Below, one piece after another: positions 4,913 through 48,114 of a stretch of DNA of 64,000 bases (position 1 is its first letter; the number at the start of each line of letters is the position of its first letter). Below the pieces are notes generated by a model, which was not told the DNA's origin, did no database searches, and saw nothing but the letters and a program-made list of their open reading frames with translations. Both the position numbers and the translations under genes were made by a program. The stretch is from contig OZ176053.1 of assembly GCA_964247055.1 (NCBI GenBank), forward strand, positions 10,540,001 to 10,604,000. Reading direction: 5' to 3'. Source of the stretch: Paragordius varius (taxonomy: Eukaryota > Animalia > Nematomorpha).

Positions 4913-4982
4913 CCTTTGCCGTTAGCGCATTTTCATGCCCCAGCCAACACCACGGGGAGGTGGCAATAGGACTTTGTTGGCC
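4913..4982 (-). ncRNA. HDV-like (CPEB3-class) self-cleaving ribozyme at the 5' end of the RTE element
   Basis: Minus strand folds as P1 GGCCAAC/GTTGGCT (G1-U wobble), P2 TTGCC/GGCAA (extendable CCT/AGG), P3 ACC/GGT, L3 TCCCCGT, P1.1 CC/GG, P4 GCAT-GAAA-ATGC, J4/2 GCTAAC with the catalytic-position C at 4925. G1 abuts the TSD. Confidence 0.85.
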
Positions 4983-7307: not shown

Positions 7308-10300
7308 TTAAGATGCAAATTGGCGTCTGTCACTGAATCACCGTTGAACGGTGTTAAGGGCAGCAGGGAATGGCTTTTGTGAAGAGACGTGGGTCTACTA
7401 TGACCTATTGCTACAAACTGATATTAAACTGCTTGGTGTTAGAACTCTTACTTAAGTTAATTTATTAAAAAGACTCTATATTTGTCTATTTTTCAAAAAA
7501 TAGCAACGAAGAAGTGAGATGCGGATTTCTTTACACTTATGCATCTAAAAAAATTTTTTCCTTAAGCGCCCATAATACTGGAGATATTTTTATAAAACAT
7601 CACCTTAATCACTGTAATATATTTATTCTCAGATATAAAACCCTAAAAGGTAGTGAAGTTTTAACTACAAAAGTATAGATTTATAAAATTTTGATAATTT
7701 TTTTTCCCAAAACAACCTTTTAACCAGGAGTTAAATTTTTAGCCTATTAATTCAACCCAAAATGTAATATAAAAAATAAAAGGGTAAGGTAGATTTTTTA
7801 TAAACAAATATTTTATATAAATTGTGGATCTAGTTTTTAATGTATATTTCATGATGTTCCGCATGGTATTAGACTTTATACACACTGTTATTAAGTGCCT
7901 TAATTTGTGTAAGGCCACAATAGTATGTATTTTTTAAGAGAATAATAAAGAATGTAATTAAAATTAATTGAAAAAGCACATACTTTATTAACATTTTTTC
8001 GTGCGACGACGCTTATCGATTTTTGGACTTTGTACAAATAAATGTGCTTCCAGATATTAATCCCATATTGAGATTTGATACATTTCATATTATATTTGAA
8101 TGGATCAATGTACTTGAAAGTCTGATTAAATATTCTATTGATGATTCTTGAATCACAATTTTTTACATTCTCATATATTTACCATTTATTGTTTTGTCCC
8201 AAAATTTTATGTGGTTTATAAATTCTTATCAATGATCGAAATATCGATAATACATAAAAAAATTTGAGATAGTAGCCTCAGTGCCTTTTATACAATTAAT
8301 CCATGAAAACTTGGAGGTTCTTAAACATTGTAAATTGTGATACCTGAAAGTCATTTATGTGTGATGTATAACAATTCCAGGGCAAATATGCATAAACAGG
8401 TTTAATTAAATTATATTTTAATTTTTATCTCTCGTTTTTGATTTTATTTTAAATTTTTTTGTTCAAAAATTATTTATTCTTTCTTGAAATAGGTAATAGT
8501 ATTAAATTATGCGAAGCTAATTGACCCTTTCTAATTTCACGAATATTTTGATTTTGGGCTATATTAATAACTTTAGACCCCAGCCCTAAAGTGCCTTCTA
8601 GGTCTTAATTTACTTTTTTATTTAGAGACAGGTCTGCAATATTTGCCGGTATTATAGAGGTCACGACCCTTGAGACAAAAAAATATTTTATTTGGTCATT
8701 CTAAATGTTTTATTCAATACTACTGGTGTTTATATGTTAAAGATTTGGATATTTAGCAATTTAATTCATACAAAGTATATTACCCCAAATTTGTTTCATG
8801 GGTTTTTATTTGAAACATAATTTTATATATCTAATGTATAAATTCCAATTTTTATGCACCACTAATTAATTATTTTGATTTTAGAATTTTCCAAAACTAT
8901 ATACCTTGTTAACACATTTCTTTTTACCAATGTTGTTAGCGCATTAGTAAAATCACAAATATATATGTATAGATTTATATATTGAATATTGGAATAATAA
9001 TCTAATTAACTGGTGAGATGACACATATTTTGACATTTTGCAAATTTATTAAATTAAAATTGTTATAATTTTAAATCATCCACATTATTCGTTAACCATA
9101 ACATTTATTTTTATCACATTGTTTCTATATGTTTCTTTTATGTTGTAATCCTAAAATATAATTTTCATTTTTATTGATTTTGTAAAATATATTATTTATA
9201 TAGATAGATAGATTAGATATTGGATATTTGGTTGGTTTTTTATCCTATTGAATAGTATGTATGTAATACGTCTTTTATTATCATAGTTCATTTCCTTTAG
9301 TAAATAGTAGTAGCGATCGTCAATATTATCATTTAAAGTTAAGTTTTTTAATATATATCTATCTAAACATTTATTGAATAATAATGGATAAAAACAATTA
9401 TATCAATATTTGATATATCTATGCTTGCTCTCTCTCGTTTTAATTTTTATTTCATTACGTATTTTCAGGACAATGGTGTCATGGGGTTAAATTTCAATTT
9501 TACGTTTTGAATAAAATTTAAGATGTCGGATATCAGTTAATCCGTTTTAATATCTTTTATGTTAAAATCAGATGGTCAATTTTTATTTAAACTTTGTAGC
9601 AATATTAGTACAATGGTGCTATTCATGAATGTTTTACAGACACATTATTTTATCTTATATTAAATATCACAGACTTATTGACTTATTTTATTGGCAGTGG
9701 TTCATTTTTAAATTCATAGTTGCGCTTTAAACTTTTGCTCACAATAATAATGGAAAAAGCATACGACTTTTTTTTTCAAAAATGCGTGACAAAATTTTAG
9801 CTAAAAATATGATTTGAATTCAATTTATATTTTATGACACGACGCAAATTTTTTGGTATTTACTGAAAGCGTTTTTAACTTTATTAAATATATTAAATTA
9901 TCTTATTCCATTATTTAATCGTTAGGTATTTTTAGTTTTGTATTTTTGAAACTACTCTCCAAAATCTATAATCTTTCTGAATATATTGTATAAAAATTAT
10001 TTTTATTTTTTTACGCTATATTTGAAATAGCTTTATTTAATTATTTAATGGGCTTAATTTATAGGCGAATCTTGGTATGTGTTGTGTTAATTACATCTCA
10101 ATTTAATTTCTAAATAATTTTGAGTAATTATTATATATTCAAAGTATTAGGTTCTCCGAAAATTCTTAAGACCTTTTTAAACCATATATTTAATGTAGGG
10201 AAAATGCGCTGATGCGGTTATCACTCTATTGAGTGTATAATTAGTCTTTATGTAGTGAAGTAGGTCCTTATTCATGGTGCTAATTCTTGTATGATATTTC

Positions 10301-41883: not shown

Positions 41884-43909
41884 ATGAATTTTCAGGAGTT
41901 AGCCGATATAACCGTTCAAAAATTATTTAAATATAACGATTTATTGGATTGGAAAATCCTGAAAAAATCGGTATAACTTTATTTTATCTTTATTATAGGG
42001 TGATGCAGTGATATCTTGCAAACCGTCCCCTGACCAGGATGGAAATTTGTATATTAAATTTTATAATCAAAAAATATTTTTTAATTAATTTATAGGTACA
42101 AATTGGAATGTACTCTTGATGCGCACCCGGAAACTGTGTTTGATCATGTTTTCCCTCATCAGAATATGTCTTTTCGGCTGTCGTGGGATTCGAATCTTGA
42201 ATTATTAGAAAAGATTGAAGAAATTTCTAAAGTTTTATGGTAATTATATATGTCAAGGATGTATTTATAACAAGGACCTATGTCAAAGGTGGATTGATGG
42301 GATTAATATCTGGTCGTGAATTTGTTGATCTCACAAAAATCACTCGTCAAAATGGAGTCATTTGTTTCACGGGTATATATTATCTAAAAAATGGCCAGTA
42401 GGTATACATACAATTACAACAAATCGAATTTCGATAATAATTTAATATTAATTAATTATTGGGTATATCTTAACATAAAGCGTTTTATCAAATAACTTAT
42501 AAAAAAGCGTCTTTGTTCTTATCTCTAATAGAATATGGCATAAAGTCATTAAGGTTTTGTCAAATCAAGAGCCTTTTGTAAAATATATTTTACCACATTT
42601 ATAATTAAAACCAAAATTTACTTATGTATTGATTAAAAAACGGAAACTTTGATAAACATGGATTTATTATATAGCTCATAGTATAACACACAAGAAATGT
42701 CCATTAGAAAATTCAGCTTACATTCGTGCCTTCAATTACCCCTGTGGGATTTTCTGTTTCTCCATACCAGAGTAATCAATTTTATCATTAAACTTAATGA
42801 TACTTTTTACATGTATTTTGCGATATAAAAAATTTAAATTATTATTTTATTGAAATCATCGATTATTTATCTTAACGGTTTATTAAATTGAACACATAAT
42901 TTTTAGGGTAAATTAATCGTTTAAAGTATTCATACATTTATCTGACCTCTCCCCCAAATATTTTACGAATTTTTTTTATAACTAAATGAACGATTAATAT
43001 TTACTTAAAGCTCTTATACATGTTTAAATACTTGTGTATTTTAGTTTAATATATGTTGAGCTAATTTCTATGTAAATCAAATTTCTAAAATCTTTATAAG
43101 TACCGATATTTTTAAAATGTTTTTACTATGATATTCATTTTATATACCATTTACAGTTCAAATTCACCCTTAAACAATTCAAATTCACCCTTAAACAATT
43201 CAAATTCACCCTTGAACAATTCAAATTCATCCTCGAACAATTCAAATTCACCCTCAAATAAATAACATGTTTTTCAAGATTAAAAATTACCTATATTATA
43301 ATATATTTTTAAAAAATAAAATTTTGTTTTAAATTAAAATAATACTGAAAAAAATAATTAATTATGCCATAAAGATATATTTTATATTAATAATGAGTTA
43401 TATTAGTTCGAAAACACATGATTTATTTTTAGGGTGAATTTGAATTGTTCAAGGGTGAATTTGAATTGTTCAAGGGTGAATTTGAATTGTTCGAGGGTGA
43501 ATTTGAATTGTTTAAGGGTGAATTTGAACTGTAAATGGTATATTTAAAAATGCAAGATAGCCATATACCAAGTAATTTATTGATGTATGTTAAAACAAAT
43601 TTAGATTGAATATTTACTATTATAAGTACTAATTCCTGTTTTTATCATACTAATCTAAATGTCTTATACGACATTTTATATTTTAGTGAGCCACATAAAA
43701 CGCATCTGGTGAAATTCATTCAAGCCGATTTGGGCGGGAAAATTCCCCATTCCTTGGTTCATGCAGCATTACCGTCCAACTTGTTAAATTTTTATAATAA
43801 TTTGGCTAAAGCCCTTGAAAGACATCGAAAAAATCTTGGCGTTAAAAAGAATATGGAGCTAGACTCAAATCATCCCAGTAGCTTTAATACTCAAACACAA
43901 AAGGCATAA
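41884..43909 (+). CDS. StAR-related lipid transfer protein (STARD4/5/6-like, START domain only)
   Basis: Exons 41884-41970, 41999-42048, 42096-42231, 42258-42372, 42675-42771, 43687-43909 in phase. R..WD, GLISGREFVDL, IRAFNYPCG and FIQADLGGKIP START motifs. Confidence 0.88.
43142..43543. mobile_element. Foldback/MITE with long TIRs built from 21-bp tandem repeats (last STARD intron)
   Basis: Left arm ATATACCATTTACAG then 5x TTCAAATTCACCCTT(A/G)AACAA; right arm is the reverse complement ending CTGTAAATGGTATAT. TA at both ends. Confidence 0.88.
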
Positions 43910-44300
43910 TACAGTTAGTTATAACAATAATTTGATTGTGATTACAAATTGTCACTTTTTTTATCATTTTTCCACAAAAAAATAGTCCGCTTATTTTTGC
44001 ATTCCAAGATTATAGATCTGTATGTAAGGATTATAAACATTGTATAATCTCACTTAGTTATATAGATTTTAATTTTCATTATATAATAATAAATAACTTG
44101 TATAATTATATATAGCTCGTTTATAGCATGATATTTGCCATTCACAAATTTTATTTTTCTTACATTGATAGATATTAGATTATTTATATGATCATATATA
44201 CCCTCCAAAATGACTTTTATACAACAAGACATTAAATACCATAATATATTTTTTTTAATAAATTTATTTTTTTGTCAATCATGTATTTAATCAATTCGAT

Positions 44301-46387
44301 TTAATCAGACTTTGTTCGCACATTATCGGATTTTGGGAGATGTTTATTTATTTTGACTAAGATTTCTTTGATCTTAAATGTTTTCATTAGCGCATCATAA
44401 TTAAGTTCCAAAGGCCGTTCAACATTATGTCCAACATCTGTATTATAATGATATAAATACTAAAGGATTTTGACTATATGGTAAAAAGACTATCCACAGC
44501 CGTAAAATATTTGAATCAAATTAGATTATAATTATTATAAAACAGTTTTATCCAATACAACCTGTATCTTAAATTTTTATATGTTGAAATTGTTAAATAA
44601 GGTAATTTAAATAGAAAATAAAAAGTCAAAATTTATGATTAGTTTTTAAATCCTTAAAATAATATATATATCATTTAAAGTAACACTTTCATATTTCATA
44701 AATGATTTTGGGTACATTATGTATACCTAAAACGGGCCTCCTAATTTTTTCGATCCCATTTTCATATAAAATTAGGGTTGGGGTTTGTTTTTCCGATATC
44801 TTGGTGTCCAAACTAATTTCAAAACATTCCTTAGCAAGCGCATCAAAGTTTGTCATGGTATCAATCGCATAAAATTGAACATAATCTTCAACAAAATGTT
44901 GTTTGGTTGAACTTGAACAATTTACATGCTGTGATGCAAAATTCTTATTTATATATTCCAGTATTTGATCAATAAGTGGCCGTAATATATGTATGTGATT
45001 CGGAGAGGATGGAACAAACAAATATGCGAATGTGTATATTGGATTTAATTCTAAAATATTTTAACAACCTTTCGTTATATCAAGATACTAATTATCATGA
45101 TTAATTTCAGCAATTAAAGAAAAGGGAATCTTAAATCGAACGGTTCGGTTATATTTTTGTATGAATAAAGCCATCTGGCCAAAAATAAAGATATAAATAG
45201 GAAAATTTATATGATAATTTTTCAAAAATCCAAAAAAGATGCTCTCATGTTAGAATAAAATAAAAACAATATAAAATAAGGTAAAAACGCATTAAATTTA
45301 AAAAATGATATTTTTTCTAAAAAACGATTTTCAAATGGGTTCTAAAAAAATTGCCGATTCTAGAAAAAGACAAATATAGAAATGTAACGAAAATTCAATT
45401 ACCTGTATGTTTTTGATTTTCATTTAGAGCCTTCACAAAATCTAGCGGTGAAATGCGCTTAAACGTTAAAGTATTTGAAGCGCCAGGTGAATTAGTTGAA
45501 ACTGGAGGTTGGGGCAAATATAGTAATTGTAAAATGCAACAAAAAGCATAAATGAAAGCAAGGGGCAATGCTGATAAACCACTCCGCACAAGTAATGCCA
45601 AAGTAGCGAATTTCGTAAACCTATAGAAAATTATATAATCTTTTATTTTATTACTTTTTATAAAGGATTGGAACCTAACCCAATATATTTTTTGAGAAAT
45701 AACAATTTCACCAATATATGGAACTTAATTTTGGTTCTAATTGAGAAAAAAATTGTTTCCGGTCCTATTTTGACAAATAATGATGATTTTTGGATTTATG
45801 AATTTACTGATATTAAGTTAATTTTATAGAGTGAATACAATAGCCATTAAAATATAAACACATTTATTAGTAATTTGTGAAAAATATATATTTTTTTAAA
45901 GTAAACCAGAATCCATGCAAATTTAACAATTTCTAAATGGAACAAAGGATTAAAATAAAGAATGATATCTTTGAAACCATTTATAACCGCGGTTTCAATT
46001 AAAATAACCTTAGGACTGTTTTTAGTGCCAAGGGGGCTCCAAAGGTTAAGTTTTTGGTTAAAATCCGTGATATTCATTTAAATATTAAATTTAGATAAAA
46101 ATATGCTCAAACATATTGCCCACTAAAGTTATATACCTAGTGATCACTTTAAAAGCATCCACAAACGATTTCACATTTCGCATTTTGAAAGTAATACATA
46201 TTCCCAAAAATAAAATAATTTCTTTTTCTCTCCAATCCATAATGCAAGGATCAAAATTATTTTTGGGTGACATATTTGAGGAATAAATCCATGTACAAAT
46301 CGGCGAAATATGTTTTGTAAATATAAACACCAAACTTAAAATTAAATCCACAATATAATGTGGATGATAAAATTGTTGCAACATCAT
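44301..46387 (-). CDS. TMX2: Thioredoxin-related transmembrane protein 2
   Basis: Exons 46387-46137, 45620-45403, 45050-~44732, 44437-44301. HPHYIVDLILS, PCIMDWREKEIILFL and KQTPTLILYENGIEKIRRP match TMX2 motifs. Confidence 0.85.
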
Positions 46388-46397
46388 TTAATGTTTT

Positions 46398-46783
46398 TTA
46401 CCTAAACAATTTCAATTTATTTAAATATGGTAATAATTCCTCTTTATAATATGGTTTTATAGCTAAAGCTGTAGGAATGTTTTCTGGTTGTTCAATCCAC
46501 AATTTATAATCAATATTATTCTTTGTTAATTGTTCAGTTAAATCTTGCAAAGCGTTTTGATTTTCAATCTAAAATAGAAGATAAGCCTAACTTGTAAAAC
46601 AACTTTATGCATAGAATCCAAATTGGAAAAATATTTTATAACATTTTCATCATTATAAAATAAATGAAGAACTGCTGTAGATGCGTGGCAAGCTTGAGTA
46701 ATTATAGATCCAATGTTCCACTTTTTATCAGTCAATAAATCTTTTCTCACTATAATATATTGTACGAGGTCTTTAAATGACAT
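46398..46783 (-). CDS. PTRHD1: Peptidyl-tRNA hydrolase domain-containing 1 (PTH2 family), 120 aa
   Basis: Exons 46783-46592 and 46568-46398, 23-nt intron. VQYIIVRKDL, GSIITQACHAS, MHKVVL, KLWIEQPENIPTALAIKPY, LKLFR*. Confidence 0.92.
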
Positions 46784-46820: not shown

Positions 46821-47364
46821 CACTTCAATTCGAATTGGGGTATCTAAATCCAGACTATATTAAAATTGATATTTTTAAAAAACTATTAAAGGAAACGGTC
46901 CCAAAACGCTCCTATCCTACAAATTATATAAATAAGCCAGAATATCTAAATATAATTTTGTGAAATAAAGTTCTATATCAAACCACTTCGCCATTTTATT
47001 TTACAAAATTTTTGCAAAATTTCGTGGTCATTAAATTTTAAAGGAAAATTACAGCTAATTTTTTAATTCATTCAACATTGATAGAAATAGAAATGGTTTA
47101 TTTTGTATTATTTTTAAAATTAGCCAATGAACACATGTTACGTTGAATAAATTTTTTACCTTTGGGTTTCGCATTATAATAAGTAGTATCAAATATTTTT
47201 GAATTTTATATATTTCGGTTTATTGATGTTATATAAGTGCAAATTTTTGCAATGGGTTTAATTCCTTCCATATTTTTCAAGGTATTTAATTTTAAACAAG
47301 CCTGGGGTATCTAACTTCCCCAATTTTTATCGAAGGACTGAAATGAATGTGTTGTATCCAAGTG
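46821..47364 (+). mobile_element. piggyBac-type (TTAA) MITE
   Basis: TTAA|CACTT ... AAGTG|TTAA. Confidence 0.88.
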
Positions 47365-47610
47365 TTAAATTACATCATATTCGGTATTTTTTATTTTATT
47401 GCCATTGTGGAATATTTATGGATACCAAACGTGTAATAATATAATCAATATAAAAGCTGAATGCGATAAAAATATAAATTTGAACTGAAATTCTGTATTC
47501 TTTGGCTCATTTAAAATACGCTTTATTGGCCCATACGGAAAAATTTTTGTCCTTATTAATGGTCCATACGCAATGCTACCAGGCCCTGATTCTGTGATGT
47601 ATTTATTTAA

Positions 47611-48114
47611 CACTTTGATTCAAAAATGGAATCTAAATATCCCAGACTATATAAAAAACTATTGAAGGAAAAGATTTTCATTTATGCTTCTATCCAAATT
47701 AAAATTAGTTTATAAATAAAAGTTCTTATCAACTACTTAACGCCATTCTATTTTTATAGCATTTCTCCAAAATATCGTGTTAATTGATTCTAGGCCTAAA
47801 ATTATATTTACTTTTTTATAAAATGAAATTTAACATTGATATAAATCAAAAACGTGTTTTTGGTATTATTTTTATATTAAGCATTTGCACACATGTCAAT
47901 TCGTCTATATTACCTTTAAGTATTACCTTAATATAAGATATATTAAGTTTCAATCGAATTTTTTTTATATTTAGGATTAATGTTATATTAGTGCAAACTT
48001 TTGTCATAGCCTTAATTCCTTCCATATTTTAAAATTTTATTTTGAACAAGCGTGGGGTATCTAACTACCTCAATTCGAACCGAATCATAAAAATGATTGT
48101 GATGTATCCAAGTG
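47611..48114 (+). mobile_element. piggyBac-type (TTAA) MITE, right TSD altered
   Basis: TTAA|CACTTTGATTC ... GATGTATCCAAGTG followed by aatc; body homologous to the family. Confidence 0.8.

What the first reader, a model, noticed from the sequence alone, without database searches (positions are those of the whole stretch)
46380..46410. PTRHD1 stop and TMX2 start are 10 nt apart on the same strand: candidate operon or bicistronic mRNA
Seen (minus): ...AAA TTG TTT AGG TAA aaaacattaa ATG ATG TTG. PTRHD1 ends at its conserved C-terminus (LKLFR*) and TMX2 begins at a normal N-terminus, so there is no room for a 3'UTR, poly(A) signal and promoter. The last PTRHD1 codons contain TTGTTTAG|G, a possible trans-splice acceptor 14 nt before the ATG. 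The same AG|GTAA could act as a donor and would be in phase with TMX2 exon 2, giving a fusion. Established: operons resolved by SL trans-splicing exist in nematodes, flatworms and tunicates, normally with longer spacers. Inference: dicistronic translation by reinitiation, SL resolution overlapping the upstream CDS, or a TMX2 promoter within PTRHD1.
Basis: partly seen in the sequence, partly recalled or inferred. Interest (0 to 1): 0.75.

Follow-up and report, generated by a model that had tools for sequence, protein, structure and literature searches.

The report
Two hairworm genes ten bases apart
In this horsehair-worm-type genome the small gene PTRHD1 stops ten bases before the membrane-protein gene TMX2 starts, and a distant horsehair worm keeps the same two genes head-to-tail, so they probably share one RNA, though no RNA data could be reached to show how the second protein is made.

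Summary
On the minus strand a two-exon PTRHD1 gene ends with TAA at 46400-46398. An intact four-exon TMX2-like gene starts with ATG at 46387, preceded directly by an in-frame stop. The spacer is 10 nt.

- **Gene ends are real.** PTRHD1's C-terminus matches its orthologues. TMX2's N-terminus aligns within 3 residues of the Gordionus TMX2-like protein.
- **The pair is conserved.** Gordionus sp. m RMFG-2023 has the same order and strand with a 42-nt spacer. The pair is absent from a mite, a springtail and three other contigs. The surrounding DNA is gene-poor, so this is not genome compaction.
- **Leaky scanning is unlikely.** PTRHD1 has 4 internal ATGs here and 7 in Gordionus.
- **No spliced-leader gene was found.** The SL1/SL2 tests are weak, so this does not exclude one.
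- **No reinitiation element was seen.** There is no TGGGA motif and no significant RNA structure.
- **The fusion idea is not conserved.**

Poly(A)-like and TATA-like hexamers lie inside PTRHD1's last codons, so "no room for signals" is too strong.

Best reading, at about 45%: one co-transcribed two-gene unit. The route to TMX2 protein is open (reinitiation, internal 5' end or trans-splicing).

The scan has noted at least ten similar pairs elsewhere in this genome.

The parts
46592..46783 (-). PTRHD1 exon 1 (64 codons, ATG at 46783)
   Evidence: Pfam PTH2 7.7e-12. 70% identical to Varroa PTRHD1. Translation checked.
46569..46591 (-). 23-nt GT-AG intron of PTRHD1, phase 0
   Evidence: Removing it restores a gap-free alignment to orthologues (...KVVLQ|IENQ...). 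Gordionus has a 39-nt intron at the same codon. Read-through ORFs of many species break at the same place.
46398..46568 (-). PTRHD1 exon 2 with stop TAA (46400-46398)
   Evidence: Pfam PTH2 positions 62-115 of 115, 3.2e-07. The C-terminus KLKLFR* aligns with orthologue ends.
46388..46397 (-). 10-nt spacer AAAACATTAA between the PTRHD1 stop and the TMX2 ATG
   Evidence: Read directly. Its last three bases are an in-frame TAA for TMX2.
46398..46405 (-). TTTAG|GTAA: acceptor-like and donor-like string in the last PTRHD1 codons (cut between 46402 and 46401)
   Evidence: Read directly. Gordionus has CTTAG|GT in its spacer, 21 nt before the ATG. Function not shown.
46416..46421 (-). AATAAA hexamer inside the PTRHD1 coding sequence, starting 21 nt before the stop
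   Evidence: The count is within the chance expectation for this AT-rich exon (1 observed, 1.6 expected).
46387..46392 (-). ATTAAA hexamer spanning the spacer and the A of the TMX2 ATG
   Evidence: Significance not shown.
46137..46387 (-). TMX2-like exon 1 (ATG 46387; ends AG|GT, phase 2)
   Evidence: 62% identical to Gordionus TMX2-like, E 6.9e-28.
45403..45620 (-). TMX2-like exon 2
   Evidence: 51% identical to P0056 residues 88-130, E 2e-13. Splice sites read.
44727..45050 (-). TMX2-like exon 3 (thioredoxin-like part, motif degenerate)
   Evidence: Matches P0056 residues 209-255, E 1e-08. Weak best PDB hit is human TMX2 2dj0.
44301..44437 (-). TMX2-like exon 4 with stop TAA (44303-44301)
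   Evidence: Frame and stop. AATAAA follows at 44268. The homology of this exon was not tested by a tool.

Best explanation
PTRHD1 and TMX2 form a conserved, hairworm-specific two-gene unit. It is most likely transcribed as one RNA from the promoter upstream of PTRHD1, giving a dicistronic transcript. PTRHD1 would be translated by normal scanning. TMX2 would be reached either by ribosomes that finish PTRHD1 and restart at the ATG 10 nt further on, or from a second RNA 5' end created inside the last part of PTRHD1. What is shown: both genes are intact, their ends are genuine, and the arrangement is kept in a second genus. What is inferred: co-transcription and the route to TMX2 protein.
For: Intact genes with genuine ends lie 10 nt apart. 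Gordionus has the same order and strand with a 42-nt spacer, although the proteins are only about 55-62% identical. The pair is not linked in Varroa, Orchesella or three other contigs. The linkage therefore arose in the hairworm line and has been kept. The surroundings are gene-poor and repeat-rich, so compaction does not explain the spacing. TMX2 exon 1 holds no AATAAA or ATTAAA (the ATTAAA at 46392-46387 only touches the A of its ATG), so an RNA that passes the junction should run on. Stop and start lie within the roughly 20-30 nt range that reinitiation after long ORFs tolerates, and are out of frame (PMC10275272). I saw three further stop-to-start pairs of this genome myself: TAATG, 18 nt and TAA-TAA-ATG. 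The scan lists more.
Against: No RNA evidence was available. PTRHD1 has 4 internal ATGs and is 131 codons long, and reinitiation after such an ORF is normally inefficient. No TGGGA motif was seen by eye in the sequences, and no significant structure lies upstream of the stop (z -1.4 and -0.8). The Gordionus spacer is 42 nt and in frame, which is outside the range known for viral reinitiation. AATAAA inside the PTRHD1 coding sequence and TATA-like strings at -61 and -40 would allow two separate, abutting mRNAs. The scan's list of tight pairs is biased towards the tightest ones.
Confidence: 0.45

Rival explanations
1. Two abutting or overlapping transcription units. TMX2 has its own start site in the last roughly 60 nt of PTRHD1 or in the spacer, with a very short leader. 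PTRHD1 mRNA is cut at or shortly after its stop codon, or runs into TMX2 intron 1.
For: AATAAA at 46421-46416 would place cleavage around the stop and spacer. ATTAAA lies at 46392-46387, and the next AATAAA lies in TMX2 intron 1 at 45868. TATAAAG at -61 and TATTTAAATA at -40 in the window, and TATATTATAAG at about -38 in Gordionus, were read. Another agent's note suggests very short leaders in this genome (s1-379342, not tested here).
Against: All these motifs occur at chance frequency in DNA with 27% G+C. Gordionus has no canonical hexamer near the PTRHD1 stop. This model gives no reason why the pair should stay glued together across genera in gene-poor DNA.
Confidence: 0.25
2. An operon resolved by spliced-leader trans-splicing. 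A leader is joined at TTTAG|G (46402|46401), 14 nt before the TMX2 ATG. Molecules processed this way give TMX2 mRNA only.
For: An acceptor-like YTTAG|GT is the only string shared by the two species at the junction. It lies 14 nt before the ATG in the window and 21 nt before it in Gordionus. It resembles the cis acceptors of these genes (TTTTAG, CTATAG, ATACAG). From my own knowledge, hairworms are the sister phylum of nematodes, which use SL-resolved operons.
Against: Rfam SL1 and SL2 give no match in the genome, although only 50 of about 37,000 candidates were scored. The best matches to the nematode SL1 22-mer lie inside a dispersed repeat and lack a GT donor. The flanks of 5S genes share no SL-like gene. 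The acceptor lies inside the PTRHD1 coding sequence, so use of it destroys the PTRHD1 message. The other tight pairs show no consistent acceptor. No paper in the library links Nematomorpha with trans-splicing.
Confidence: 0.15
3. Alternative cis-splicing from a shared promoter. The donor of PTRHD1 exon 1, or of a 5' non-coding exon, would be joined to the acceptor at 46402|46401 to make a TMX2-specific mRNA. Alternatively, the AG|GTAA donor would be joined to TMX2 exon 2 to make a fusion protein.
For: The acceptor-like and donor-like string is present, and the AG|G phase matches TMX2 exon 2.
Against: Gordionus has no GT donor at the PTRHD1 end and no intron between the parts that correspond to TMX2 exons 1 and 2. 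A fusion would also drop TMX2's conserved first membrane segments.
Confidence: 0.07

Closest known systems
Dicistronic nuclear genes of animals (Drosophila dicistronic transcripts; human MOCS2, SNURF-SNRPN). Named from my own knowledge, not checked in a paper here.
   Same: Two unrelated protein genes lie on one strand, with a small protein first and a very short spacer. The arrangement is conserved between related species.
   Different: No transcript is shown here. The spacer (10 nt) is at the short extreme. The upstream ORF is not depleted of ATGs, so the leaky scanning invoked for many such genes does not fit.
Termination-reinitiation after long ORFs (calicivirus and influenza B TURBS; 'scenario 2' of PMC10275272)
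   Same: The stop and the next start are within 20 nt and out of frame, and the upstream ORF is long.
   Different: No TGGGA-type 18S-complementary motif and no significant structure lie upstream. The Gordionus spacer is 42 nt and in frame. This is a cellular gene pair, not a viral one.
Nematode SL1-type and SL2-type operons; tunicate operons without intercistronic regions (my own knowledge)
   Same: Same-strand housekeeping genes are packed closely, with an acceptor-like AG a few bases before the downstream ATG.
   Different: No SL RNA gene was found. There is no room for an upstream 3'UTR between the genes, and the candidate acceptor lies inside the upstream coding sequence.

Membership tests
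PTRHD1 (PTH2-domain protein) | PTH2 domain (PF01981) covering the whole small protein | tested here: met
   Exon 1 covers profile positions 2-57 and exon 2 covers 62-115 of 115. Both score over the curated cut-off.
PTRHD1 (PTH2-domain protein) | Closest named relatives are PTRHD1 rather than PTRH2, and the length and C-terminus agree | tested here: met
   Best hits are named PTRHD1. The end KLKLFR* aligns with KLYK and KLFK. A separate PTH2 gene exists elsewhere in the genome (C2).
TMX2 (thioredoxin-related transmembrane protein 2) | Colinear similarity to recognised TMX2 proteins along the whole length | tested here: met
   Exons 1-3 match Gordionus XP_065314545.1 colinearly. That protein hits human TMX2 9kcm_T at 1.2e-25. 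Exon 4 was not tested.
TMX2 (thioredoxin-related transmembrane protein 2) | Thioredoxin-like domain with the single-cysteine SxxC-type motif | tested here: not met
   The window reads SSPNH where Gordionus reads WSPEC. There is no Pfam thioredoxin hit at E below 0.1, and the direct PDB hit to TMX2 is only E 0.54.
SL trans-spliced operon | A spliced-leader RNA gene in the genome | tested here: inconclusive
   Rfam SL1 and SL2 give no hit. The SL1 pattern hits lie in a repeat without a donor, and nothing is linked to 5S genes. A divergent leader would be missed.
SL trans-spliced operon | An intercistronic region that holds the 3'-end signals of the upstream gene before the acceptor | tested here: not met
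   The spacer is 10 nt and the candidate acceptor lies inside the PTRHD1 coding sequence.
SL trans-spliced operon | Polycistronic precursor and leader-bearing downstream mRNA | not testable with these tools
   No RNA contigs for either gene are in the collections.
Termination-reinitiation dicistronic mRNA | Stop and restart codon within about 20-30 nt | tested here: inconclusive
   The window has 10 nt, which meets the criterion. Gordionus has 42 nt, which does not.
Termination-reinitiation dicistronic mRNA | Upstream tethering element (18S-complementary motif or structure) | tested here: not met
   No TGGGA was seen by eye in the last 170 nt of PTRHD1. Fold z-scores are -1.4 and -0.8. Unknown cellular elements cannot be excluded.
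Leaky-scanning polycistronic mRNA | Upstream cistron depleted of AUG codons | tested here: not met
   There are 4 internal ATGs in the window PTRHD1 and 7 in Gordionus, close to shuffle expectation.

The most novel reading that the evidence does not exclude
Hairworms may carry a whole class of conserved two-gene units whose stop and start codons abut or overlap. The downstream genes would be expressed by a cellular, TURBS-independent termination-reinitiation system, or by a still undiscovered spliced leader. Either would be the first operon-like gene organisation described in Nematomorpha, and it would bear on how nematode operons arose.
Probability: 0.2. Interest if true: 0.8.

Novelty: new member of a known kind. 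Interest (0 to 1): 0.5.

Why it matters
Animals outside the trans-splicing phyla rarely place two full protein genes on one message. How ribosomes reach the second gene after a long first one is poorly understood for cellular mRNAs (PMC10275272). This pair, with at least ten similar ones noted in the same genome, would give a natural set of cases in the sister phylum of nematodes. Existing RNA-seq or long-read cDNA could test them directly. On its own the pair is one more bicistronic-type locus. Its value lies in being conserved between genera and in belonging to a series.

Tried and rejected
- **RNA evidence.** No protein from the same species or from Gordionus transcripts turned up for PTRHD1 or TMX2. 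Contigs of the nearest ENA hit came without DNA.
- **Nematode-type leader.** Rfam SL1 and SL2 gave nothing. The four genome matches to the SL1 22-mer, best at 20 of 22, lie inside a dispersed repeat or unrelated DNA and are not followed by GT. I rejected them as SL genes.
- **5S-linked leader gene.** Six 5S loci share only 5S and repeats.
- **Deep conservation.** The pair is not linked in Varroa, Orchesella, an unidentified contig with TMX2 exon 1, an unidentified genomic PTRHD1 contig, or two PTRHD1 transcript contigs.
- **Leaky scanning.** Rejected on ATG counts.
- **Read-through fusion.** Rejected. TMX2 is in the +1 frame relative to PTRHD1 in the window, and Gordionus has three in-frame stops in its spacer.
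- **Splice fusion.** Rejected as not conserved.
- **Structured element at the junction.** Not significant.
- **Literature.** No paper in the library links Nematomorpha or Paragordius with trans-splicing, spliced leaders or nuclear operons. Two hairworm genome papers do not mention them.
- The spliced gene models were searched exon by exon, by reference.

Full report
**What is there**

The window is G000:C4:10540001-10604000 of a 110.6-Mb assembly with about 27% G+C.

On the minus strand one search shows ...AAA TTG TTT AGG TAA aaaacattaa ATG ATG TTG... The stop is at 46400-46398 and the ATG at 46387-46385, so the spacer is 10 nt as reported.

**The upstream gene is PTRHD1**

- Exon 1 is 46783-46592 and exon 2 is 46568-46398. 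Both hit Pfam PTH2 over the curated cut-off and together cover profile positions 2-115.
- The best named relatives of exon 1 are PTRHD1 proteins (Varroa, 70% identity).
- Orthologues fetched end in ...KLYK or ...KLFK exactly where the window ends in ...KLKLFR*.
- The alignment across the exon junction (...DSMHKVVLQ|IENQNALQDL...) is gap-free only if a 23-nt GT-AG segment (46591-46569) is removed.
- Gordionus has a 39-nt intron at the same codon. Read-through ORFs of many other species break at the same point. The 23-nt segment is therefore a real, very short intron at an old intron position.

**The downstream gene is TMX2-like**

- Exon 1 (83 codons) was searched against 1.84 billion representatives. 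It gave one strong hit, P0041 (62% identity, E 6.9e-28, query 3-83 against protein 6-86).
- That cluster is Gordionus sp. m RMFG-2023. RefSeq calls its full-length member XP_065314545.1 'thioredoxin-related transmembrane protein 2-like'.
- That protein hits human TMX2 structures (9kcm_T at 1.2e-25 and 2dj0).
- Window exons 2 and 3 match it colinearly. Exon 4 was placed by frame and splice sites only.
- The N-termini differ by only three residues. A TAA lies directly in frame before the window ATG, so the start is at 46387 or at the next codon.
- I searched the model exon by exon, by reference. The joined proteins were not built or searched.

**Is it more than chance?**

- The Gordionus locus L012 (OX940784.2) carries a PTH2 gene at 7560-7958 and the TMX2-like gene from 8001. 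They share a strand and are 42 nt apart.
- A tblastx of the 22.8-kb Gordionus locus against the whole window finds only these two genes colinear.
- The proteins are only about 55-62% identical, so the two worms are well diverged.
- The pair is not linked in Varroa or in Orchesella.
- It is also not linked in an unidentified contig with TMX2 exon 1, an unidentified genomic PTRHD1 contig or two PTRHD1 transcript contigs.
- Around the pair the window is gene-poor and repeat-rich, so general compaction does not explain the spacing.
- The linkage is therefore a derived trait of the hairworm line that has been kept.

**Tests of mechanism: translation**

- *Leaky scanning.* PTRHD1 has four internal ATGs in the window and seven in Gordionus, near shuffle expectation. 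This route is unlikely.
- *Read-through.* TMX2 is in the +1 frame in the window, and three in-frame stops lie in the Gordionus spacer. This is excluded.
- *Splice fusion (AG|GTAA to TMX2 exon 2).* The phase is right. However, Gordionus has neither the donor nor the intron, so a conserved function is unlikely.
- *Reinitiation.* A 10-nt, out-of-frame stop-start fits the viral 'long ORF' class, in which the codons lie within 20 nt and efficiency falls beyond about 30 nt (PMC10275272). Against this, I saw no TGGGA motif by eye, the junction has no significant structure (z -1.4 and -0.8), and Gordionus has 42 nt.

**Tests of mechanism: RNA processing**

- *Spliced leader.* Rfam SL1 and SL2 found nothing, though only 50 of about 37,000 candidates were scored.
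- The nematode SL1 22-mer matches best at 20 of 22. That match lies inside a dispersed repeat and has no GT after it.
- Six 5S loci share no linked small gene.
- The one junction feature shared by both species is YTTAG|GT, 14 nt before the ATG in the window and 21 nt before it in Gordionus. I estimated the chance of this at roughly 1-2%, after the fact.
- *Separate mRNAs.* AATAAA lies inside the last PTRHD1 codons (46421-46416) and ATTAAA spans the spacer and the ATG. TATA-like strings lie at -61 and -40.
- All of these occur at chance frequency in this AT-rich DNA, and they are not conserved in Gordionus.

**Context in the genome**

I saw three other junctions myself: PFDN1-TMEM199 (TAATG), TAF13-HSCB (18 nt) and the small gene before UTP6 (TAA-TAA-ATG).

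The scan's notes list more: COX17-DPH3, COX19-TAF1B, ANAPC16-RCL1, SMIM12-TRNT1, C19orf53-GatC, a PIGBOS1-like pair and ASNS-TRIP13. In nearly all of them the first gene encodes a small protein.

These notes are unchecked and biased towards the tightest cases. So the scan has found this kind of pair before on other DNA of this genome.

**Verdict**

The pair is a conserved unit, most likely co-transcribed. No RNA could be reached, so the mechanism for TMX2 expression is unresolved.

I put a dicistronic unit at 0.45, abutting separate mRNAs at 0.25, SL trans-splicing at 0.15 and alternative cis-splicing or fusion at 0.07.

No paper in the library reports operons or trans-splicing in Nematomorpha.

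Noticed in passing
window 46569-46591 (-): PTRHD1 has a 23-nt GT-AG intron at a widely conserved phase-0 position. Gordionus has 39 nt at the same codon. It is one more case of the ultra-short introns that the scan has noted across this genome.
   Followed up: partly
window 44990-45010 (-), TMX2 exon 3: The TMX2-like protein has lost the single cysteine of the thioredoxin-like motif (SSPNH against WSPEC in Gordionus). It also carries an insertion of about 20 residues after it. The gene is otherwise intact, so it may no longer act through a thiol.
   Followed up: partly
L016:1501-1522 and L018:1501-1522; related copies at window about 46830-46960, 47300-47340 and 47600-47700 (-): A dispersed repeat family contains GGTTTAATTACCCCAGTTTGAA, which matches the nematode SL1 leader at 20 of 22 positions. 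It lies inside the repeat with no GT donor after it, so the likeness is probably coincidental. Copies lie just upstream of PTRHD1.
   Followed up: partly
window 4913-4982 (-): There is an Rfam match to the HDV-like drz-agam-1 ribozyme (38.9 bits, cut-off 37).
   Followed up: no
window about 43430-43540 (-): There is a tandem array of a roughly 22-nt unit (caattcaaattcacccttgaa...) a few hundred bases beyond a convergent gene on the + strand, whose last exon reads like a START-domain C-terminus (about 43650-43900).
   Followed up: no
L011:1410-1540: The UTP6 start (MAEFVQLNLEQ...) and the long UTP6 ORF beginning at 1501 are in different frames. A very short intron or a frameshift must lie between them.
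   Followed up: no
L004 (ENA ERZ25766962 contig, unidentified organism): A PTRHD1 homologue sits in a run of apparently intron-less same-strand genes spaced about 70-150 nt apart. It is an operon-like, very compact eukaryotic contig unrelated to the hairworm.
   Followed up: no
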